From positions 1-7,387 of the forward strand of contig JAKLZA010000084.1 of NCBI GenBank assembly GCA_030704615.1: a stretch of 7,387 nucleotides of DNA. Direction: 5' to 3'. The stretch is from Takakia lepidozioides (Eukaryota > Plantae > Bryophyta). Below are positions 1-7,387 of the stretch, in pieces. Numbering within the stretch: the first letter of the stretch is position 1; each line of letters opens with the position of its first letter. Made by a program: the position numbers and the translations under genes. The notes under the pieces are model-generated. The model ran no database searches and was not told where the DNA came from. It was given only the letters and a program-made list of their open reading frames with translations.

Positions 1-670
1 TGAGGGGCTTTTGACAGCCGTTCCTGAGGGCCTTTGGCGGCTGTGACGGGCTGTGATGGGCGGTGACAGGCCGTGCTTGAGGCCTTTGGGGCTGTGACGG
101 GCTTGAGGGTCTGTGACAGGCCGTGCCTGAGGCCTTTGAGGGCTGTGATGACGGGCTGTGATGGGCTGTGACCTTGCCGTTCCCCCCATGGCCCCTTGTG
201 CTGTGACGGGCTGTGAGGGACTGTGACAGGCCGTGCCCTAAGAGGCCTTTGAGGGCTGTGACGGGCTGTGAGGGGCTGTGACAGGCCGTGCCCTGGCTTT
301 GGGCTGTGACGGGCTGTGAGGGGCTGTGACGGCCGCGCCTGAGGCCTTTGGGGGCTTGTGGACGGTCCTGTGACAGGCCGTGCCTGAGGCCTTTGGGGCT
401 GTGATTGGCTTTGACGGCCGTGCTGAGGCCTTTGAGGCTGTGACGGGCTGTGAGGGGCTGTGACAGGCCGTACCCATGGCCTTTGGGGCTGTGACGGGCT
501 GTGAGGGGCTGTGACAGGCAGCGCCTGAGGCCTTTGGGGCTGTGACGGGCTGTGAGGGGCTGTGACAGGCTGTGCCTGAGGGCCTTTGAGGCTGTGACGA
601 GCTGTGAGGGGCTGTGACAGGCTGTGCCCAGTGGCCTGTGGGACTGTGACGGCTGTGACCAGTGAGCTGT
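1..670 (+). repeat. G-rich tandem repeat array: about 13 units of about 51 bp, consensus approx. CTGAGGCCTTTGGGGCTGTGACGGGCTGTGAGGGGCTGTGACAGGCCGTGC, with an internal 10-bp GGGCTGTGA(C/G) subrepeat; truncated by the window start
   Basis: The CCTTT-like anchor recurs at about 31, 83, 133, 193, 246, 296, 345, 390, 429, 480, 531, 583 and 635 (spacing mostly 49-53 bp). GGCTGTGA occurs about three times per unit. Confidence 0.95.
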
Positions 671-947
671 GTGGGCCTGTGCTGGTCTGTGGTGGCCCGT
701 GTTGACCTGTGGATGGCCTATGCTGACTCGTGGAGGCACTGGTGGACTAAGGACTGGCATGTGGTCTGGAAGGCCGAATTTTGAAGCTCGTGGAGGGCGG
801 TTTGAGGAGTATCTTCATGATATTCCCATGTCATGCAAGTTCAGGTGTAGGCTATTTTAGGAACTTAGTATTCCAAACCATAAGCCGCAACAGGTTCTCT
901 ACCCGGTTACCTTGTGGAGAGGGGGTTAGGGACATGTTCATGACCGG

Positions 948-1988
948 TTGAGTGTCAACACGGAGGTGCCACTAGTTGCTGGGGACAGTGCCGGTTCGAG
1001 CACTAGCGATACTAGTGGGTACACGAGACGAGGTGTGCGGTTTAGGCCACCTTCACCTCCTGTGTCTTCCACGGAAGGTTCTGATTCGGATTGTGAATCA
1101 GGAGGGCTCATACCGGCGGTGCAAGTTGTTTCTTTGCCATTATTGTGGGACACAATGGAGGAGATGTATGGAGCTACCAAGGGGCCACGAAGGTACTCTG
1201 GGGCGGTGGGCACCATTGAGTTGGATGATTTTATCCAAGAGTTTGATAGTTGGTGTGATTTGCAGCAAATGCGCAATCCACAACTATTTACGCCGTTCAT
1301 GGCATGGAAAGGGCTGTTTCAGCACCTTGAGGGGCCGCCTATGGATGATTACCATGAGTTCAGGCGGGGGCATGAGGTTGAGATCGAGGAGTGGAGGATG
1401 TACTGGTCACCCGACTATGTCTCCATCACTAGGGGCACTAGAGCCACGAGGGCAGTGGCTACACCTGCCGCTGCACCGGCAGCTTCAGCAAGCAGCAGTG
1501 GGACTGGTGGTACAGTAGCTACGACGTCCACCCAAGCCACTACCGCACCAGCACTAGCACCCGTGCCTGCCTTCAACCCTGTTGTGGAGTTCTTCGAAGA
1601 GTTGAGAGGGAACTACCAAGGGGTGAGGACAGAGAAGTTGCGGAGCTTGCAAGAGTTCCAACGGAAGCCGACCGAGAGCTTGAGGGAGGCTTTCACTCGC
1701 ATGAGGCGCTTGATAAATGTAACCCAAGGGGTTACGGAAGCTCAGGCAGTCCAATTCTGGTATGGGATATTGGACAAGGAGCTGAGGAGAAGGGTGCGGG
1801 ATGCAACTCTCCTACAAGCGGCCCAACCCACCTTAGCAAATGTGTTTTTGCTGGCAGAGCGGATAGAGCTCAACATGGTGGAGGAACGAGTGGTCATGGT
1901 GGGATTTGCTAAGGAGACACCACGGGGTAGTGGTGCTCCTAGCCAACCACTACCTCAACGTGCTCAAGGCAACAAGGGGCTCAGGTGA
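948..1988 (+). CDS. gag: Gag N-terminal/capsid-like region (frameshifted into the next ORF at about 1976-1979)
   Basis: 346-aa ORF upstream of the zinc knuckles. Gag-like blocks: PRRYSG...LDDFIQEFDSWC, FQRKPTESLREAFTRMRRL (major-homology-region-like), QFWYGILDKELRRRV...PTLANVFLLAERIE. The ORF starts at TTG 948 and the first in-frame ATG is at 1155; ATGs at 934/940 would be in frame if one base were restored near 948. Confidence 0.8.
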   Translation: MSVNTEVPLVAGDSAGSSTSDTSGYTRRGVRFRPPSPPVSSTEGSDSDCESGGLIPAVQVVSLPLLWDTMEEMYGATKGPRRYSGAVGTIELDDFIQEFDSWCDLQQMRNPQLFTPFMAWKGLFQHLEGPPMDDYHEFRRGHEVEIEEWRMYWSPDYVSITRGTRATRAVATPAAAPAASASSSGTGGTVATTSTQATTAPALAPVPAFNPVVEFFEELRGNYQGVRTEKLRSLQEFQRKPTESLREAFTRMRRLINVTQGVTEAQAVQFWYGILDKELRRRVRDATLLQAAQPTLANVFLLAERIELNMVEERVVMVGFAKETPRGSGAPSQPLPQRAQGNKGLR

Positions 1989-2853
1989 AGCTCAGGGAAG
2001 GGCAGAGAGGACCTCAATGCAGGGGTCTCTCCCTTCATTTGCTGGCCAACAACGGGCGGATGTGGTGTGCTGGACATGTGGAGGACCCCATGTCAAGAAG
2101 GATTGCCCAGAGGGAGGCAAAGGGTCGGCACATGCACAGCCTGCACAGTTGCAGTGTGGGCATTGTGGCAAGCACGGGCATGGAGAGGCCCAGTGTTATA
2201 GTTTGCATCCTGAGTTGCGCCCAGGCCAGTTCCAAGGGAACAATGGTGGCCGGGGGCGAGGTGGAGCAGCCCAGAGAGGACGAGGTGGCCAGCCACGAGG
2301 CAAAGGGCAAGCTCAACGTGGCCAAGGACGCGGAGGTCAGGGTGTTGACCAAGGCATGGCCAACCGGCTTCAGCAGCTAGAGCAGAGGCTCGCTGCCATG
2401 GCTACAGCTCAGGTGGTACCGGCTCTAAGGCCGGATGGTCCACCTCCTGCTCCTGAGGGAGGAGATATGGGAGGCATGGGATTCATGTGTGGAGCAGCAC
2501 TACCACTAGTGCAGGTGGAGTCTGCTGCAGCCGTGACTCGAGGAGCAGCACGAGTTCCTGAGCCACGAGGTGCAGAGGTGGAGTTGGATCCACAGCGTGG
2601 GGAGGCAAGCCGTCAGGCTAGGCTTCCTCAGTCATTCACATTGGCGGAGACAGTGTCGACGCCATCCATGGCACCTAGTTCTCGCCCGACTGTTACCGAG
2701 GCGGAGGTTACTATGCCATTGGGGAGAGCTACACGGGTAGCACCACTACCTAGTGTTGCCAAGGCTACGGCAGCTAGTGTGCTGCTAGGAGCGGCCACAT
2801 CTGTGTGCCAGGCTCCATTGTTCTCGGCTACCATGATTGCGACGCCGGGGTAA
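1906..2853 (+). CDS. gag: Gag nucleocapsid region: two CCHC zinc knuckles, RGG-rich tract and Ala/Pro-rich spacer (true coding probably about 1978-2840)
   Basis: CWTCGGPHVKKDC (CX2CX3HX4C, 2068-2106), CGHCGKHGHGEAQC (CX2CX4HX4C, 2155-2196) followed by YSLHPELRP, then GGRGRGG...RGRGG...GRGGQG (about 2245-2343). Confidence 0.9.
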   Translation: MLRRHHGVVVLLANHYLNVLKATRGSGEAQGRAERTSMQGSLPSFAGQQRADVVCWTCGGPHVKKDCPEGGKGSAHAQPAQLQCGHCGKHGHGEAQCYSLHPELRPGQFQGNNGGRGRGGAAQRGRGGQPRGKGQAQRGQGRGGQGVDQGMANRLQQLEQRLAAMATAQVVPALRPDGPPPAPEGGDMGGMGFMCGAALPLVQVESAAAVTRGAARVPEPRGAEVELDPQRGEASRQARLPQSFTLAETVSTPSMAPSSRPTVTEAEVTMPLGRATRVAPLPSVAKATAASVLLGAATSVCQAPLFSATMIATPG

Positions 2854-4994
2854 GACCAGCTGAGGTGTTCAGGCTGGCAGCTACACTCTGTGAGAGTGGG
2901 GAGGTTACTTCATCTTCTGCGGAGATAGTGGGAGGTGTAGTGCCGGAGGGATCCTCGGATTTGAGGGTCAAGACTGCCACGGCGGCGCCATGGCAAGCTG
3001 CAGCTGCCAGGTTGATGGAGCTGCCAGCTAGGCCAGCCATTGAGCGCGCCATGGTGACACCTGGAGTTGTCATGTTAGACAACCAGGATGGCATTTTCTG
3101 TTTGAGTGGACCGGCAGGCAAGAGGTACCGGCCACTGCGAGTCTTGTTGGACTCGGGAGCTCAGCCACTGATGCTGGGCAGAGCTGCTATTGCAGGCTTG
3201 GGCCTCACGGAGGCGGATATGGAGCCTTGTCCTTTCCAGATACAGACGTCTCTGGGAGGATCGGAGCAGGCTCGGGGCATGACACGGCATGAGTTGGCTA
3301 TCAGACTACGGCCGGATCACCCTACAGATGGCTCAGTGATGCGAGCCAAGGCCATTGTGACAGACGCAGTCTCATACGATGTCCTGGTTGGTGGGGCAGT
3401 GTTGTACCCCATGGGCTTCACCCTGGATTTTTGGGAGGAGTCAGCTTCCTATAGGCCTGCATGGCAGTCAGGGGAGGGCCGGCGTGTGCAGCTCCCTGTG
3501 ACGTTCATAGGAGGAGTTGCGGTTGCCCAGCGAGGCAAGATGCCGACACTAGCAGCATTCACAGCGGCAGTGAGTTGGCCTAGAGAGTTGCTTGAGGGCA
3601 ATGCTCATTCAGAGGATGTACCACCTTCGGGAGAGCAGGATGACATGTATGGTATGGCGGAGTTGCCTACCATGGTTGCTCAGACTCCATTGTGGGGCAC
3701 GAGCAAGGATTTGCAGCGGGATGCTGATCGACGGGTGCAACAAGCCTGGGTGGAGGCTTTTGTACCGTCAGGAGAGGAGGAGAGTGTGGAGATTGCACCA
3801 GGACCACCTCAATTGTCTCCATTGGACACCACACCTATTGTGTGGCAGTCTCCGGATGAAGGCATTTGTCTTCTGGACTTGTTTGGCGGGATCAGCACCG
3901 GATTGGCTGCTGTGTTACAGGCAGGTGTACGAGTTCGGCGTTACCTGTATGTGGAGAGGGATGAGACTGCACGACGCGTTTCACTTCGCCATGTTGCTCA
4001 GTTGGTGCAGCGGTACCCTGAGTTGTTGTCGGTGTCTGCAATTCGTGGATATCAGCAGGCCTTGCCAGCAGACATTTCGTTGCTGGGGGCGCAGGATTTG
4101 GAGCGGGTTGGCTCCATTGATCTGGTAGTGGCAGGTTGGCCCTGCCAAGGGCATTCATCAGCCGGGCATGGCAATGGATTGCGAGACTCGAGGTCGGGTC
4201 TGTTTTGGGAGATGGTGCGGGTTTTGCGCCACTTGCAGCTTCATCAAGCTGTATCTCCAGCATACATCTTGGAGAATGTGCCACTGATGGGCGATTCTCG
4301 GGCCAGGGTGATGGCCAGTGTGCATCAAGTCCGGTCGTGGCTTGGGTCAGCAGTGTTGCTAGATGCAGCTACAGTGGGGTCACGGGCTCATCGTCCACGG
4401 CTATGGTGGACTAACATGATGCCACCCGCACTGCTCAAGCGTGCATTTGATGGGGTGCAGCGGCCAGCACATCTCACAGTGGATAACATTCTGGACACAG
4501 GGAGGCAGTCTCAACGTGTGAGACACGATGACCGTTCGCCTTTGGCAGTGGTCAACAAGGTGGGTCAACCACGAGCAGCATTACCTACACTGCTCAGCTT
4601 CCCAGGATCGCATGCTTTCCGGGATAGTGGACCTGGCCTCCTGTGGGATGCTCAGTTGCAGCAGTTAGTGGAGCCTAATGCTGACGAGCGTGAGCGGGCA
4701 ATGGGTTTTACCACTGGTACCACGGCGGTGTCGTCTCTTTCTGAGGCATCACGTCGTCAAGTGTTGGGGCAAGCAATGGATCTCAATTGCTTGACCTGGA
4801 TTATCAGCTTGGCTCTAGCTGAGCAACGCAGAGTGCGGAATACACTTCCCTCAATGGTCTCTCTGCCTACCGATGGTACAGGCAGTGAGTGGGGGCGAGC
4901 ATATGAGGACCACGGGGTGCATGCATCCATGGCACACGTGGGAGGTGCTCGAGGTTCAGAGGGAGTTGGCAGCCAAGGCGGCTGTGATGGATGA
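2805..4994 (+). CDS. pol: Pol segment: retropepsin-type aspartic protease fused in frame to a C5 cytosine DNA methyltransferase (true coding probably about 2841-4871)
   Basis: A single uninterrupted 729-aa ORF contains both VLLDSGA and the C5-MTase motifs FGG, PCQ, ENV, HRPR, ERAMGF and LGQA. Confidence 0.92.
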   Translation: MPGSIVLGYHDCDAGVRPAEVFRLAATLCESGEVTSSSAEIVGGVVPEGSSDLRVKTATAAPWQAAAARLMELPARPAIERAMVTPGVVMLDNQDGIFCLSGPAGKRYRPLRVLLDSGAQPLMLGRAAIAGLGLTEADMEPCPFQIQTSLGGSEQARGMTRHELAIRLRPDHPTDGSVMRAKAIVTDAVSYDVLVGGAVLYPMGFTLDFWEESASYRPAWQSGEGRRVQLPVTFIGGVAVAQRGKMPTLAAFTAAVSWPRELLEGNAHSEDVPPSGEQDDMYGMAELPTMVAQTPLWGTSKDLQRDADRRVQQAWVEAFVPSGEEESVEIAPGPPQLSPLDTTPIVWQSPDEGICLLDLFGGISTGLAAVLQAGVRVRRYLYVERDETARRVSLRHVAQLVQRYPELLSVSAIRGYQQALPADISLLGAQDLERVGSIDLVVAGWPCQGHSSAGHGNGLRDSRSGLFWEMVRVLRHLQLHQAVSPAYILENVPLMGDSRARVMASVHQVRSWLGSAVLLDAATVGSRAHRPRLWWTNMMPPALLKRAFDGVQRPAHLTVDNILDTGRQSQRVRHDDRSPLAVVNKVGQPRAALPTLLSFPGSHAFRDSGPGLLWDAQLQQLVEPNADERERAMGFTTGTTAVSSLSEASRRQVLGQAMDLNCLTWIISLALAEQRRVRNTLPSMVSLPTDGTGSEWGRAYEDHGVHASMAHVGGARGSEGVGSQGGCDG
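3129..3440 (+). other. Aspartic protease (retropepsin) domain
   Basis: Catalytic DSG at 3150-3158 in RVLLDSGAQPLML; flap-like IQTSLGG; closing hydrophobic-Gly motif YDVLVG (G at 3390-3392). Confidence 0.88.
3861..4820 (+). other. DNA (cytosine-5)-methyltransferase catalytic domain, DNMT3-like, non-permuted
   Basis: Motif I LLDLFGGI (FGG 3882-3890); motif II YVE (E 3954); motif IV DLVVAGWPCQGHS (PCQ 4140-4148); motif V SGLFWEMVRVL; motif VI ILENV (ENV 4272-4280); motif VIII AHRPRLWW (HRPR 4389-4400); TRD PTL (4584-4592); motif IX ERERAMGF (4686-4709); motif X RRQVLGQAM (GQA 4767-4775). Confidence 0.95.
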
Positions 4995-5267
4995 GGTTGG
5001 GGATTCTTCTCGAGTTGAGGAGGTCCTCAAGGATGAGATGATGGGGCAGGATGATGCCTTGTCATTGACTGAGCAGGTAGGGAGTACTGCTCAAGAGGTT
5101 GCAGCATAGCAACCACGGGACGCGTCCTCTACCTCTAAGCCCACTGGACTTAAGGTTGTAGTTACGGAGGACAATTGGGAGCCTGACATTGGACCCATTG
5201 TCACCGGAGGAGAGAGACACGTATACGGCGGTTCCTGAGGGCTTACAGGAATTGCTTTGCCTTCAGT
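4873..5267 (+). pseudogene. Disrupted Pol linker between DNMT and RT (frameshift near 4871, in-frame TAG 5107-5109, further frameshift(s) at about 5195-5230)
   Basis: The frame starting at 4873 reads MVQAVSGGE...HPWHTWE...EVAA*QPRDASSTSKPTGLKVVVTEDNWEPDIGP. The RT frame extends upstream as RRFLRAYRNCFAFSLKDLG, a typical pre-RT helix. Confidence 0.65.
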
Positions 5268-5960
5268 TTGAAGGACTTGGGAGCACTGAAGGGTCAAGAG
5301 ATCCGTATTGAGTTGGCCACTGACACGCCAATCTTTCGGAGACCCTATAGATACAGTGACATGGAGAGGTCTTTGATTCAGATGAGGACTCAAGATCTCT
5401 GGGAGGCAGGTTTGGTGGAGCTCTCTGGTGGAGAGTATGCTTCAGCCACAGTGATGCCAGCCAAGAAGGATGTCTATGGCAATTGGACGGAGAGACGTAT
5501 GTGCGGTGATTACCGGCCTGTAAATCGTCAGACCAAGTCCGATAAGTATGCCATGCCAACACCAGAGGAGATCTTTGATGCCATCGGGCATGCTAAGGCC
5601 TTTAGCACTTTGGATTTACGATCCGGATATCACCAGTTGCCAATCAAGGAGGCGGACAAGCAGAAGACGGCATTCTGGGGGATCAATGAGCACGGCAAGG
5701 ATTACCTATATCAGTGGCGGTTCTTACCATTTGGGCTTAAGAATGCTCCTGCAGAGTTTCAGAGAGTCATGGATAGGATTCTAGCAGGGGTGGACTTTGC
5801 TCGGTGCTACATAGATGACATCATCATCTTTAGTGTTACGATGGAGGAGCATGAGAGACACCTTCAGGTGGTATTGGAGCGCTTGAGAGCGCACGGATTG
5901 AAGTTGCATCCGGGAAGTGCAAGTTTTTCCACAACCAGATTGAGTATCTGGGTCACATGA
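5268..5960 (+). CDS. pol: Reverse transcriptase (Ty3/gypsy type); 1-bp frameshift at about 5912-5915
   Basis: PIFRRPYRYS, RMCGDYRPVN (from 5496), LDLRSGYHQ (D 5613), KTAF, LPFGLKNAPAEFQR (from 5724), YIDD (5808-5819). Restoring one base gives LKLHPGKCKFFHNQIEYLGH. Confidence 0.97.
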   Translation: MKDLGALKGQEIRIELATDTPIFRRPYRYSDMERSLIQMRTQDLWEAGLVELSGGEYASATVMPAKKDVYGNWTERRMCGDYRPVNRQTKSDKYAMPTPEEIFDAIGHAKAFSTLDLRSGYHQLPIKEADKQKTAFWGINEHGKDYLYQWRFLPFGLKNAPAEFQRVMDRILAGVDFARCYIDDIIIFSVTMEEHERHLQVVLERLRAHGLKLHPGSASFSTTRLSIWVT

Positions 5961-7336
5961 TATATCCTGGAGGATTGGGGGTACAGCAGACTAAGGTAGA
6001 GGCCATTGCACAAATTCCACGCCCCACGGATGTGAGCCGAGTTCGAGCGTTCATGGGGTTGGCAAACTATTATAGACGGTTTGTCAAGGGATTTAGTACC
6101 ATTGCAAAGGCTCTAACCAAGCTGACCAAGGTGGACCAGGAGTGGCAGTGGGAAGATGAGCAGGAACGAGCTTTTCAAGAGCTCAAGGCGAGGTTGACCT
6201 CGGCGCCTATCTTGAGACGACCTATCAGGGGGCGTCCCTTTCAGCTGCATACGGATTGGAGCATGCTGGGGCTTGGAGCGGTGCTCACACAGGTGGATGA
6301 TGAGGGAAGAGAGTTCGTAGTGGCTTACGCTAGCCGCTCGAACAACGCTGCAGAGGCTAAGTACAGCTCATATGAGGGAGAGTGCTTAGCTGCAGTGTGG
6401 GCCGTGGCACACTTCAGGTGCTATCTATACGGCAATCTTTTCACCCTTGTCACGGATCACCAGCCACTCAAGTGGTTGATGGAGTCAGACAAGCTTACAG
6501 GGAAGCTTGCACGGTGGGCACTTATACTCCAGGAGTATGACTTTCAGGTTGTGCATCGACCGGGTTTGGTCAATCGGGATGCGGATGGATTGAGTCGCAA
6601 TCCATGCATGAGCCAGCAGGATGACACTGGAGCTCGGTGGCATGGTGAGACGGACGAGGAGATGGTGCCGGGATGGCACGCATCTGCATTTTTGTGTATC
6701 TTGGCATCGGGAGGTCAGATTGGACCTACAACAGGGATGACTGTAGACGGAGTGTCTGAGGACCCTGAGGCTAGTGATGAGCTAGGTGGTGCCAGAGATA
6801 TACATGAGGATTCGGCTGTGTTGGACTACCTCCGCACGGGAGACACGGCAGCCATTGTGACTGCCAGGGAGAGGGATCGGATCCTGCAACGAGCCAAGAG
6901 GTTCAAGTGGGAGGGGATACACCTACTTCGAGTGTGGGAGGGTGGTCGGGTGAGGATTGTGCCTCACCCCACACAGCGTGCACGGTTAGTGCGGCATGCC
7001 CATGAGGAGTTGGGGCATTTTGGAGTGCGACGCACTCACAGTTTACTGCAGGGGCAGTATTGGTGGCGTGGTATGCACACAGAGGTGCAACAGTTTGTGG
7101 CTAGGTGCATGGTGTGTGACAGGGTGCGTGCTTCATTCAACGCCCCTACACCACAGTTGCATCCTTTACCCATCATGGGATTGGGCTACAGGTGGAGTCT
7201 TGACTTTGGAGGGCCGTTGCCATTGACGATGCGCCACCACAGATATGTGTTGGTGATGGTGGAGCACTTCTCCAAGTGGATTGAGTTGGTTCCATTGCCT
7301 GACAAGGCTAGTGAGGGGGCTGCGTATGCATTCTAG
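5915..7336 (+). CDS. pol: Pol C-terminal segment: RT thumb/connection, RNase H, integrase N-terminal zinc domain and start of the catalytic core
   Basis: The frame is open from at least 5915 (KCKFF...YLGH), then VRAFMGLANYYRRFVKGFS, WEDEQERAFQELK, RNase H and integrase motifs. The TAG at 7334 arises from a 1-bp loss. Confidence 0.95.
   Translation, partial: KCKFFHNQIEYLGHMIYPGGLGVQQTKVEAIAQIPRPTDVSRVRAFMGLANYYRRFVKGFSTIAKALTKLTKVDQEWQWEDEQERAFQELKARLTSAPILRRPIRGRPFQLHTDWSMLGLGAVLTQVDDEGREFVVAYASRSNNAAEAKYSSYEGECLAAVWAVAHFRCYLYGNLFTLVTDHQPLKWLMESDKLTGKLARWALILQEYDFQVVHRPGLVNRDADGLSRNPCMSQQDDTGARWHGETDEEMVPGWHASAFLCILASGGQIGPTTGMTVDGVSEDPEASDELGGARDIHEDSAVLDYLRTGDTAAIVTARERDRILQRAKRFKWEGIHLLRVWEGGRVRIVPHPTQRARLVRHAHEELGHFGVRRTHSLLQGQYWWRGMHTEVQQFVARCMVCDRVRASFNAPTPQLHPLPIMGLGYRWSLDFGGPLPLTMRHHRYVLVMVEHFSKWIELVPLPDKASEGAAYAF
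6233..6600 (+). other. RNase H domain (Ty3/gypsy type)
   Basis: Catalytic residues: D in HTDWS (6254), E in YEGECLA (6380), D in TDH (6455), D in ADGLSR (6584); also GAVLTQ, VAYASR and LARW motifs. Confidence 0.95.
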
Positions 7337-7387
7337 ATCGTGTGCTTAGCCGATTCGGTGCTCTAGCTGAGGTACTCACGGACCAAG
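7001..7387 (+). other. Integrase (HHCC zinc domain plus partial DDE core), truncated by the window end; 1-bp frameshift at 7331-7333
   Basis: H 7001, H 7016, C 7106, C 7115; first D in WSLDFGGP (7202). After the shift it reads LDRVLSRFGALAEVLTDQ with the second D at 7381. Confidence 0.95.

What the first reader, a model, noticed from the sequence alone, without database searches (positions are those of the whole stretch)
2841..5960. Gypsy retrotransposon encoding its own cytosine-5 DNA methyltransferase inside Pol, between protease and RT
Seen: a full C5-MTase domain of about 320 aa is in the same uninterrupted ORF as the aspartic protease and directly precedes RT, with all recognisable catalytic and SAM-binding motifs intact. 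Established: canonical Ty3/gypsy Pol is PR-RT-RH-IN with nothing here, and 5mC is normally the host's transposon-silencing mark. From memory, DNMT-carrying retrotransposons were reported in Symbiodinium dinoflagellates and charophyte algae (de Mendoza et al. 2018), so the concept has precedent; whether this lineage, host or insertion position is new needs checking. Inference: as part of Pol, the enzyme would be packaged in the virus-like particle and could methylate new cDNA before or at integration (self-marking, protection or self-attenuation), or alter host chromatin.
Basis: partly seen in the sequence, partly recalled or inferred. Interest (0 to 1): 0.95.

Follow-up and report, generated by a model that had tools for sequence, protein, structure and literature searches.

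The report
Plant jumping gene carrying a DNA methylase
This is a decayed copy of a very abundant Ty3/gypsy retrotransposon that carries its own DNMT3-type DNA cytosine methyltransferase. The type was published for one alga; here it appears as an old, conserved family of liverworts, mosses and their algal relatives, with a "leaky" stop codon right after the methylase.

Summary
A complete, non-permuted DNMT3-class C5-methyltransferase domain (nt 3831-4850) lies in the same open frame as the retroviral-type protease (ORF 2805-4994). It comes before RT, RNase H and integrase.

PR to RT is not one uninterrupted ORF. This copy has about seven 1-2-base frame breaks. The DNMT-RT linker also carries an in-frame TAG at 5107.

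That stop is not decay. It sits at the same place, mostly in the plant-virus leaky context stop-CAR-YYA, in 9 further elements I read from Marchantia, Calypogeia, Sphagnum and metagenomes. Two of them have fully open frames of about 2,300 codons broken only by this stop. The family therefore encodes Gag-PR-DNMT, then a stop, then RT-RH-IN(-PHD).

- **Selection:** the DNMT is the most conserved part of ORF1 (pN 0.15-0.21 at near-saturated pS).
- **Fold:** the model (pLDDT 95.7) matches DNMT3A/B/C.
- **Copy number:** read data show a very high-copy family.
- **Layouts:** relatives split cleanly in two. PR-DNMT-RT occurs in streptophytes (bryophytes, Closterium). RT-RH-DNMT-IN-PHD occurs in chlorophytes.

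The closest published case is KnitGypsy-Dnmt3 of Klebsormidium (de Mendoza 2018). I found no paper on land plants. This scan has already reported the same family and the leaky stop on other DNA of this genome. Enzyme activity and its target remain inferred.

The parts
1..734 (+). G+C-rich tandem array (about 13 units of 51 bp, plus shorter related units) in the leader upstream of gag. It is not a terminal repeat; the window does not reach the element's ends.
   Evidence: Tandem Repeats Finder; self-BLAST; GC 0.65. In the open-frame Marchantia relative L011, gag starts about 2.9 kb after the 5' repeat.
948..1988 (+). gag, N-terminal part (frame 0); frame breaks near 1975 and 2016
   Evidence: Weak Pfam Retrotrans_gag hit, E 0.0011. 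tblastn to the L007 polyprotein aa 9-307 covers 1041-1901.
2017..2853 (+). gag C-terminal part (frame 1) with two zinc knuckles at 2068-2106 and 2155-2196; frame break near 2846
   Evidence: ORF list; motif search; tblastn to L007
2985..3560 (+). Probable retroviral-type aspartic protease, with the DSG motif at 3144-3161
   Evidence: Pfam Asp_protease_2 E 0.0043, below cut-off. The motif is conserved in six aligned elements. Related proteins carry precomputed PF13650.
3561..3830 (+). Poorly conserved spacer between PR and DNMT
   Evidence: Alignment; pN 0.36-0.48, the least constrained part of ORF1
3831..4850 (+). Complete, non-permuted DNMT3-class cytosine-5 DNA methyltransferase domain, with no stop or frameshift in this copy. 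Motif I is at 3876-3902, PCQ at 4137-4148, ENV at 4272-4280, motif VIII at 4383-4409, IX at 4686-4709 and X at 4767-4787.
   Evidence: Pfam PF00145. PDB phmmer DNMT3A E 3.5e-11. AlphaFold2 pLDDT 95.7. Foldseek top 50 hits are all DNMT3A/B/C, E about 1e-19, target TM 0.8-0.86. Catalytic C, ENV and RxR are invariant or nearly so in 40 relatives. pN 0.15-0.21.
4851..5231 (+). DNMT-RT linker. In this copy it is read in frame 1 from about 4872 to about 5218, so there are two frame breaks.
   Evidence: Three-frame translations aligned to relatives; length differences at 4871/4874 and 5218
5107..5115 (+). Conserved in-frame stop with a leaky context, TAG-CAA-CCA (stop-CAR-YYA). It marks the boundary between Gag-PR-DNMT and RT-RH-IN.
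   Evidence: The stop is at the same position in L001, L002/L003, L004, L005, L006, L007, L008/L010 and L011. L007 and L011 are otherwise fully open frames.
5232..5942 (+). Reverse transcriptase (YIDD at 5808-5819); frame break near 5911
   Evidence: Pfam RVT_1 E 1.8e-27; tblastn 66% identity to L007
5957..6540 (+). RT connection and Ty3/gypsy-type RNase H (frame 2)
   Evidence: Pfam RT_RNaseH E 3.5e-36 and RT_RNaseH_2 E 2.7e-33
6962..7387 (+). Integrase: H2C2 zinc domain (7001-7117) and the start of the catalytic core. There is a frame break near 7335, and the window cuts the domain off.
   Evidence: Pfam Integrase_H2C2 E 3.3e-16 and partial rve

Best explanation
The window holds the internal part (leader to integrase core) of a decayed copy of a very high-copy Ty3/gypsy retrotransposon family.

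Shown:
- The family's coding plan is Gag(zinc knuckles)-PR-DNMT3-like methyltransferase, then one in-frame stop, then RT-RNase H-integrase(-PHD finger).
- The stop lies in a context (stop-CAR-YYA) that plant ribosomes are known to read through at low frequency.
- The domain has the complete DNMT3 fold and catalytic residues.
- The active lineage has kept it under purifying selection since before liverworts, mosses and zygnematophyte algae diverged.

Inferred:
- Most translation yields Gag-PR-DNMT, and a minority yields the full polyprotein. The methyltransferase would then be made and packaged at Gag stoichiometry and freed by the protease.
- Inside or on leaving the particle it methylates cytosines of the element's own new cDNA de novo. 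The copy would arrive in the genome already carrying the host's mark. That could let it pass as 'self', protect the cDNA, or steer its chromatin state.
- This copy itself is dead. It has about seven frame breaks and a CpG deficit typical of long-methylated DNA.
For: - **Anatomy:**
- **DNMT3 class:** (DNMT3A E 3.5e-11; motifs I, IV, VI, VIII, IX and X aligned; pLDDT 95.7; top 50 structural matches are all DNMT3A/B/C).
- **Conserved residues:**
- **Selection:**. DNMT pN is 0.15-0.21, against 0.20-0.32 for PR and 0.36-0.48 for the spacer, with pS 0.57-0.77.
- **Real and repeated:**. In run X1, 64,203 contig pieces were laid, about half of them at 99% identity or more. The stretch is also held in runs of several other studies. 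One is a cloned 2.26-kb fragment from another labelled organism, 99% identical.
- **Same order elsewhere:**
- **Leaky stop:**. The site is the same in 10 elements read (nine distinct sequences). Seven sequences have stop-CAR-YYA.
- **Open-frame relatives:** L007 has one frame of 2,379 codons and M. polymorpha L011 one frame of 2,324 codons. Each has this stop as its only in-frame stop.
- **ORF1 ends:** many gene-caller proteins of the family end 60-120 aa after the DNMT.
- **Precedent:** retroelement DNMT3 domains can methylate CG de novo (SymbioDIRS-Dnmt3 in yeast, PMC5890265).
- **CpG deficit:** CpG observed/expected is 0.52.
Against: - No activity data exist for this family. The Klebsormidium Gypsy DNMT domain gave no methylation in yeast, which the authors called inconclusive.
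- Readthrough is inferred from context and conservation alone.
- Two of the elements read deviate from YYA. Sphagnum L006 has TAA-CAA-CCC. Marchantia L011 has TAG-CAA-CAA.
- One metagenomic type-A polyprotein (P0073, 2,188 aa) has no stop at all between DNMT and RT.
- No RNA run was found holding the stretch, so expression is unshown.
- dS is near saturation, so the omega values are rough.
- The target of methylation (own cDNA, host DNA or RNA) is not addressed by any result here.
Confidence: 0.65

Rival explanations
1. The enzyme is active but acts mainly on host chromatin, in trans or at the integration site. It would seed heterochromatin that limits the family's own expression (self-attenuation) or marks insertion sites, rather than methylating cDNA in the particle.
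For: Relatives carry a PHD finger on the integrase, which points to chromatin-directed action. De Mendoza 2018 discusses self-limitation as a possibility. This copy is CpG-depleted.
Against: Nothing here separates it from cDNA methylation. Placing the DNMT in the Gag-PR unit favours packaging with the particle. CpG depletion is expected for any silenced plant transposon.
Confidence: 0.2
2. The domain no longer methylates DNA. It would serve as an RNA m5C methyltransferase or as a nucleic-acid-binding or structural module of the particle.
For: KnitGypsy-Dnmt3 and SymbioLINE domains gave no DNA methylation in yeast. Motif X departs from the canonical form in the whole clade.
Against: The catalytic Cys, ENV, the motif VIII arginines and the SAM-binding motif I are invariant or nearly so across 40 divergent relatives. 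A conserved DNMT3-like target-recognition region folds with high confidence. The yeast result was inconclusive, because human DNMT3B also failed.
Confidence: 0.12
3. The conserved stop is a true ORF boundary but is not read through. RT-RH-IN would be made by another route, such as splicing, reinitiation or a subgenomic RNA.
For: No experimental readthrough data exist. Two elements deviate from the YYA rule.
Against: The downstream frame is always the same frame as ORF1 and has no conserved start codon near the stop. The six bases after the stop fit the known leaky motif in seven of nine distinct sequences, although the surrounding linker is poorly conserved.
Confidence: 0.1
4. The arrangement is an artefact: a chimeric assembly, or a one-off capture of a host DNMT3 gene by a single insertion.
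For: None found.
Against: The junctions PR-DNMT and DNMT-RT are spanned by contigs of independent studies and by a cloned fragment covering 3065-5327. The same order occurs in several genera and in hundreds of database proteins.
Confidence: 0.01

Closest known systems
KnitGypsy-Dnmt3 of Klebsormidium nitens (de Mendoza et al. 2018, Nat Commun 9:1341, PMC5890265)
   Same: - Both have an intronless, non-rearranged DNMT3-type domain inside the polyprotein of a Ty3/gypsy element.
- Both are multi-copy.
- Both show purifying selection on the DNMT.
- Motif X is atypical in both.
- The terminal repeats of KnitGypsy are arranged A-coding-B-A-B. I see the same arrangement in the Marchantia relative L011.
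   Different: - The hosts here are land plants (liverworts, mosses) and Closterium. The 2018 survey of 96 genomes contained no Marchantia and reported the elements only from K. nitens.
- The conserved leaky stop after the DNMT is not mentioned in that paper's text.
- I could not obtain a K. nitens sequence or the figure. Domain position and direct homology with KnitGypsy are therefore untested.
Chlorophyte Gypsy polyproteins with DNMT between RNase H and integrase, plus a C-terminal PHD finger (Scenedesmus, Haematococcus, Monoraphidium, Chromochloris; database proteins; no paper found)
   Same: The DNMT domain is homologous (35-49% identity, E 1e-44 to 1e-94). The backbone is Ty3/gypsy, and there is a PHD finger after the integrase.
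   Different: The DNMT sits after RNase H, not between PR and RT. In a tree of 152 DNMT domains the two layouts fall on opposite sides of one branch (support 99).
SymbioDIRS-Dnmt3, SymbioLINE-Dnmt (Symbiodinium) and EpiLTRs (Cymbomonas, Euglena; bioRxiv 10.64898/2026.05.21.726589)
   Same: These are also retroelements that carry a cytosine methyltransferase. SymbioDIRS-Dnmt3 is also DNMT3-type and was shown to methylate CG de novo.
   Different: They are different element classes (DIRS with tyrosine recombinase, LINE) or have a different DNMT origin (EpiLTR DNMT is sister to DNMT4 and sits at the 3' end of pol, together with a DAM domain and a chromodomain).
Type I leaky stop of tobamoviruses (UAG-CAA-UUA; consensus stop-CAR-YYA) and gag-pol readthrough of gammaretroviruses (from general knowledge)
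   Same: An in-frame UAG is followed by CAA/CAG and a YYA codon. It separates an abundant upstream product from a rarer replicase or Pol extension.
   Different: Here the stop lies inside what is usually called Pol, after PR and DNMT, not at the gag-pol border. Readthrough is not demonstrated.

Membership tests
Ty3/gypsy (Metaviridae) LTR retrotransposon | Pol order PR-RT-RNase H-integrase, with Ty3-type RT and RNase H | tested here: met
   Pfam RVT_1, RT_RNaseH, RT_RNaseH_2, Integrase_H2C2 and partial rve occur in that order. PR has a DSG motif. The DNMT is an insert between PR and RT.
Ty3/gypsy (Metaviridae) LTR retrotransposon | Gag with zinc knuckle(s) upstream of PR | tested here: met
   Weak Retrotrans_gag hit; two Cys-His knuckles at 2068-2106 and 2155-2196
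Ty3/gypsy (Metaviridae) LTR retrotransposon | Two identical long terminal repeats flanking the element | tested here: inconclusive
   The window does not reach the ends. In the Marchantia relative L011 the repeats are split as A ... B-A-B, 99-100% identical. That is not a plain LTR pair. The same is stated for KnitGypsy-Dnmt3.
DNMT3-class cytosine-5 DNA methyltransferase | Non-permuted motif order I-IV-VI-VIII-IX-X, with catalytic PC(Q), ENV and motif VIII arginines | tested here: met
   The order is unlike plant DRM, which is permuted.
DNMT3-class cytosine-5 DNA methyltransferase | Fold and target-recognition region closest to DNMT3 rather than DNMT1, DNMT2 or bacterial enzymes | tested here: met
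   Foldseek top 50 hits are all DNMT3A/B/C. By sequence, DNMT3A scores E 3.5e-11, against DRM2 at 1e-4 and M.HhaI at 2.5e-5.
DNMT3-class cytosine-5 DNA methyltransferase | Placement inside the DNMT3 clade in a tree with host DNMT families | not tested
   No host DNMT3, DNMT1 or DNMT5 sequences could be obtained as references. My tree holds only element-borne domains.
DNMT3-class cytosine-5 DNA methyltransferase | SAM-dependent de novo methylation of DNA cytosines | not testable with these tools
   This needs expression and bisulfite or EM-seq.
Gypsy-DNMT3 retrotransposons (KnitGypsy-Dnmt3 type) | DNMT3-type domain in frame within the polyprotein of a multi-copy Gypsy element | tested here: met
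Gypsy-DNMT3 retrotransposons (KnitGypsy-Dnmt3 type) | Purifying selection on the DNMT among copies or lineages | tested here: met
   DNMT omega is about 0.05-0.16 between lineages, with dS near saturation. It is 0.28 between two Marchantia copies.
Gypsy-DNMT3 retrotransposons (KnitGypsy-Dnmt3 type) | Direct sequence relationship to, and same domain position as, the K. nitens elements | not tested
   No protein labelled K. nitens appeared among the listed hits. Figure 4c of the paper is not held.
Programmed stop-codon readthrough, type I (stop-CAR-YYA) | In-frame stop followed by CAR-YYA, with the downstream ORF in the same frame | tested here: met
   The window has TAG-CAA-CCA at 5107. Seven of nine distinct sequences fit.
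Programmed stop-codon readthrough, type I (stop-CAR-YYA) | Measured readthrough in vivo | not testable with these tools
   This needs a reporter assay, ribosome profiling or proteomics.

The most novel reading that the evidence does not exclude
Gypsy elements carrying a DNMT3-type methylase may not be a Klebsormidium oddity. They may be an ancient lineage spanning the green plants.

- It would have two fixed layouts that follow the host split. PR-DNMT-RT occurs in streptophytes, up to and including land plants (liverworts, mosses). RT-RH-DNMT-IN-PHD occurs in chlorophytes.
- In the streptophyte branch a programmed leaky stop places the methylase in the abundant Gag-PR product.
- The model liverwort Marchantia polymorpha carries a young copy whose frame is open apart from that stop. 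The long-open question of what a transposon-encoded DNMT does could therefore be tested genetically in a land plant.
Probability: 0.55. Interest if true: 0.75.

Novelty: new member of a known kind. Interest (0 to 1): 0.55.

Why it matters
Cytosine methylation is the host's main weapon against transposons, so a transposon that keeps its own de novo methylase for hundreds of millions of years is a paradox. It has so far been studied only in a dinoflagellate and one alga, neither of which is genetically tractable.

- The family is conserved and abundant in bryophytes, including Marchantia polymorpha. The question therefore moves into a model land plant with knock-outs, methylomes and transformation.
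- The conserved leaky stop changes the expected dose and packaging of the enzyme from Pol level to Gag level. That bears directly on whether it methylates cDNA in the particle.
- The clean split between a streptophyte and a chlorophyte layout suggests a very old association between this methylase and Gypsy elements in the green lineage.

Tried and rejected
- **Exact look-up of the window's 729-aa ORF in public assemblies:** not on record. The source organism was not identified. Run names are coded. The nearest named proteins are from liverworts.
- **Conserved frameshift in RT:** I considered that the RT frameshift near 5911 might be a programmed -1 shift, because the Marchantia copy L002 also shifts by -1 inside RT. 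I rejected this. The two shifts lie at different places, and the open-frame relatives L007 and L011 have none.
- **Breaks as homopolymer assembly errors:** three breaks abut short G runs, but the others do not. The broken state is also seen in a large share of read contigs. Real deletions are more likely, though this is not proven.
- **Link to Klebsormidium:** three protein searches and two cluster look-ups returned no protein labelled K. nitens. The paper's supplement gives no sequences.
- **Literature:** searches for a report of bryophyte or land-plant Gypsy-DNMT elements found none. This covers open-access papers and bioRxiv only.
- **IQ-TREE:** a run on 152 rows did not finish in time, so I used FastTree.

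Full report
**1. What is in the window**

The + strand carries the coding part of one retroelement in five successive ORFs.

| ORF | Frame | Content |
|---|---|---|
| 948-1988 | 0 | gag |
| 1906-2853 | 1 | gag C-terminus |
| 2805-4994 | 0 | PR and DNMT |
| 5268-5960 | 0 | RT |
| 5957-7336 | 2 | RH and IN |

- Pfam finds a weak Retrotrans_gag hit. It also finds DNA_methylase (PF00145, E 1.2e-12), RVT_1 (E 1.8e-27), the two Ty3-type RNase H models (E 1e-33 to 1e-36) and Integrase_H2C2, plus the start of rve.
- Two zinc knuckles lie at 2068-2106 and 2155-2196. A DSG protease motif lies at 3144-3161, and YIDD at 5808-5819.
- The protease gets only sub-threshold Pfam hits. Its motifs are conserved in every relative aligned.
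- Upstream of gag is a G+C-rich tandem array of 51-bp units at 1-734.
- The window ends in the integrase core and holds no terminal repeat.

**2. The methyltransferase**

- The domain at nt 3831-4850 has no stop or frameshift.
- Its best solved relatives by sequence are human and mouse DNMT3A/B/C (E 3.5e-11). Motifs I, IV, VI, VIII, IX and X align in the normal order. Permuted plant DRM2 and bacterial M.HhaI score far lower.
- An AlphaFold2 model built on 40 relatives has mean pLDDT 95.7 and pTM 0.93.
- All 50 best Foldseek matches in the PDB are DNMT3A, 3B or 3C catalytic domains (E about 1e-19, target TM 0.8-0.86).
- Across 40 relatives of 33-75% identity, several residues are invariant or nearly so. 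They include the catalytic Cys, the ENV glutamate and asparagine, the motif VIII arginines and the FxG of motif I.

Another note of this scan (s1-474184) says the same.

**3. The correction: breaks, and one stop that is not a break**

PR and DNMT share one ORF, but RT does not.

- By alignment to relatives, the coding frame leaves frame 0 near 4871-4874 and returns near 5218. Other breaks lie near 1975, 2016, 2846, 5911 and 7335.
- At each of these places, public read contigs of the same family include forms that differ in length by one or two bases (table 4).
- The breaks are therefore lesions of this copy or sub-lineage, not features of the family.
- At several breaks the window-like state makes up much of the depth. 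It is probably shared by many copies.
- Only three of the breaks abut short G runs, so simple homopolymer error does not explain them all.

The in-frame TAG at 5107 is different. I found it by comparing the linker with a Marchantia copy. I then read ten elements in all (nine distinct sequences).

| Element | Source | Stop and next two codons |
|---|---|---|
| Window | this genome | TAG-CAA-CCA |
| L002/L003 | Marchantia | TAG-CAA-CCA |
| L004 | Marchantia | TAG-CAA-CCA |
| L005 | Calypogeia | TAG-CAA-TCA |
| L001 | Logan contig | TAG-CAG-TTA |
| L007 | ENA metagenome contig | TAG-CAG-TTA |
| L008/L010 | JGI metagenome contigs | TAA-CAA-CCA |
| L006 | Sphagnum | TAA-CAA-CCC |
| L011 | Marchantia | TAG-CAA-CAA |

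- Seven of the nine distinct sequences fit stop-CAR-YYA. From general knowledge this is the tobamovirus-type leaky context.
- The surrounding linker is otherwise poorly conserved.
- L007 is a single frame of 2,379 codons whose only internal stop is this one.
- L011, from the M. polymorpha chromosome record AP019869.1, is a single frame of 2,324 codons with the same property.
- Dozens of gene-caller proteins of the family (1,228-1,376 aa, Gag-PR-DNMT) end 60-120 residues after the DNMT.

The family's plan is therefore Gag-PR-DNMT, a leaky stop, then RT-RH-IN. In L007 a PHD finger follows the integrase.

After I had reached this reading, the scan's notebook showed the same one for another piece of this genome (s1-446192). 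It also held notes on the PHD finger and on the liverwort host (s1-446136, s1-447641). I treat those notes as agreement, not as evidence.

**4. Real, repeated and selected**

- Laying Logan contigs on 1500-7387 gave 64,203 pieces in run X1 alone. About half were 99% identical or better. There was full coverage in a 'plant metagenome' run and in a run of another study.
- One 2.26-kb cloned fragment (3065-5327, with vector polylinker at both ends) comes from a differently labelled organism and is 99% identical.
- A chimeric assembly or single capture is excluded.
- Between the window, Calypogeia, Marchantia, Sphagnum and L001, synonymous sites are near saturation (pS 0.57-0.77). Non-synonymous divergence is 0.15-0.21 in the DNMT, 0.20-0.32 in the protease and 0.36-0.48 in the spacer.
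- The DNMT is the most constrained part of ORF1, with omega roughly 0.05-0.16. These values are rough because dS is saturated.
- The copy's CpG observed/expected ratio is 0.52, with an excess of TpG/CpA. This is what long-methylated DNA looks like, though I had no genome background to compare with.

**5. Relatives and distribution**

- The exhaustive profile-free search found 5,149 representatives at E below 0.001. Of these, 266 scored below 1e-30, and many are polyproteins of 1,000-3,456 aa.
- I located the window's five domains in the 323 proteins fetched up. Two layouts emerged (Pfam). About 78 proteins have PR-DNMT-RT-RH-IN. About 96 have RT-RH-DNMT-IN, usually with a C-terminal PHD finger.
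- In a FastTree of 152 DNMT domains the two layouts need only one change of state. All 34 rows with the window's layout, plus 14 untyped rows, form one set with support 99. The tree is unrooted and has no host DNMT3 in it.
- Named hosts of the window's layout are Marchantia polymorpha, Calypogeia fissa, Sphagnum species and three Closterium strains.
- Named hosts of the other layout are the chlorophytes Scenedesmus, Haematococcus, Monoraphidium and Chromochloris.
- No vascular plant appeared among the named hits. That is not proof of absence.
Its nearest named relatives are liverwort proteins (64-76% identity in the DNMT).

**6. Comparison with what is published**

- De Mendoza et al. 2018 describe Dnmt3 domains in the Pol ORF of a Gypsy element of Klebsormidium nitens. 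They report conserved catalytic residues, Ka/Ks below 0.2 and repeats arranged as in DIRS elements.
- Their 96-genome survey held no Marchantia. Its only bryophyte was Physcomitrella.
- Papers from 2025 and 2026 by the same group still list only 'streptophytes (Gypsy-DNMT3)' with reference to that work.
- The Marchantia relative L011 has exactly the A ... B-A-B repeat arrangement, at 99-100% identity. This fits the KnitGypsy description and a note of this scan (s1-446157).
- I could not bring in a K. nitens sequence. Direct homology and the position of the DNMT in KnitGypsy are therefore untested.
- I file the finding as a new member of a known kind (a land-plant and zygnematophyte branch). 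The leaky stop and the two-layout split are additions that I did not find in the literature I could search.

**7. Mechanism**

Shown: the coding plan, the fold and residues, the selection and the stop context.

Inferred: readthrough, Gag-level dosage and packaging, release by the protease, and de novo methylation of the element's own cDNA.

- The only functional precedent is CG methylation by SymbioDIRS-Dnmt3 in yeast. The Klebsormidium domain gave none, in an assay where human DNMT3B also failed.
- The rivals are action on host chromatin, a non-DNA role, and expression of RT-IN by another route. They are listed with their tests.

**8. Limits**

- In line with the tools' rules for proviral stretches in plants, I built no consensus and no repaired frame. 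I give only the places of the breaks.

Noticed in passing
window 1-734: A G+C-rich (65%) array of about 13 tandem 51-bp units, built on a shorter 10-bp core, lies in the leader upstream of gag. Its role (promoter, packaging signal or satellite-like expansion) is unknown.
   Followed up: partly
window 1-7387: CpG observed/expected is 0.52, with TpG+CpA at 1.41, over the whole copy. This fits long-term cytosine methylation and deamination. No genome background was available for comparison.
   Followed up: partly
L011 3826-14657 (M. polymorpha AP019869.1): This copy's Gag-PR-DNMT-stop-RT-RH-IN frame is open apart from the conserved stop. Its repeats are arranged A ... B-A-B (A 298 bp at 99%, B 113 bp at 100%), so it is a young insertion in the model liverwort. 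I describe it only.
   Followed up: partly
L002 9211-17258 and L003 9211-17258 (M. polymorpha GCA_003032435.1, two scaffolds): There are 8,048 bp of 100% identity between two scaffolds, while the adjoining 3.6 kb is only 96.5% identical. It could be a recent copy, gene conversion or an assembly duplicate. Both copies carry a stop inside the protease active-site motif.
   Followed up: no
proteins P0072, P0078, P0088, P0083, P0375, P0381 and others: Chlorophyte and metagenomic Gypsy polyproteins carry the related DNMT between RNase H and integrase, with a PHD finger at the C-terminus. I found no paper describing this layout.
   Followed up: partly
protein P0365: A 1,974-aa RT-RH-DNMT-IN-PHD polyprotein is labelled in NCBI as coming from a 'Minisyncoccia bacterium' MAG. 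It is most likely eukaryotic (algal) contamination of the bin.
   Followed up: no
run X7, window 3065-5327: The single contig of this small 2016 run is a cloned fragment of the element, with plasmid polylinker sequence at both ends. It is 99% identical to the window but filed under a different organism label.
   Followed up: no
window break sites about 1975, 2016, 2846, 4871-4874, 5218, 5911, 7335: At several breaks the window-like (broken) state makes up half or more of the contig depth in run X1. The frame-broken form may therefore itself have been amplified (non-autonomous spread), or many contigs may derive from few loci.
   Followed up: no
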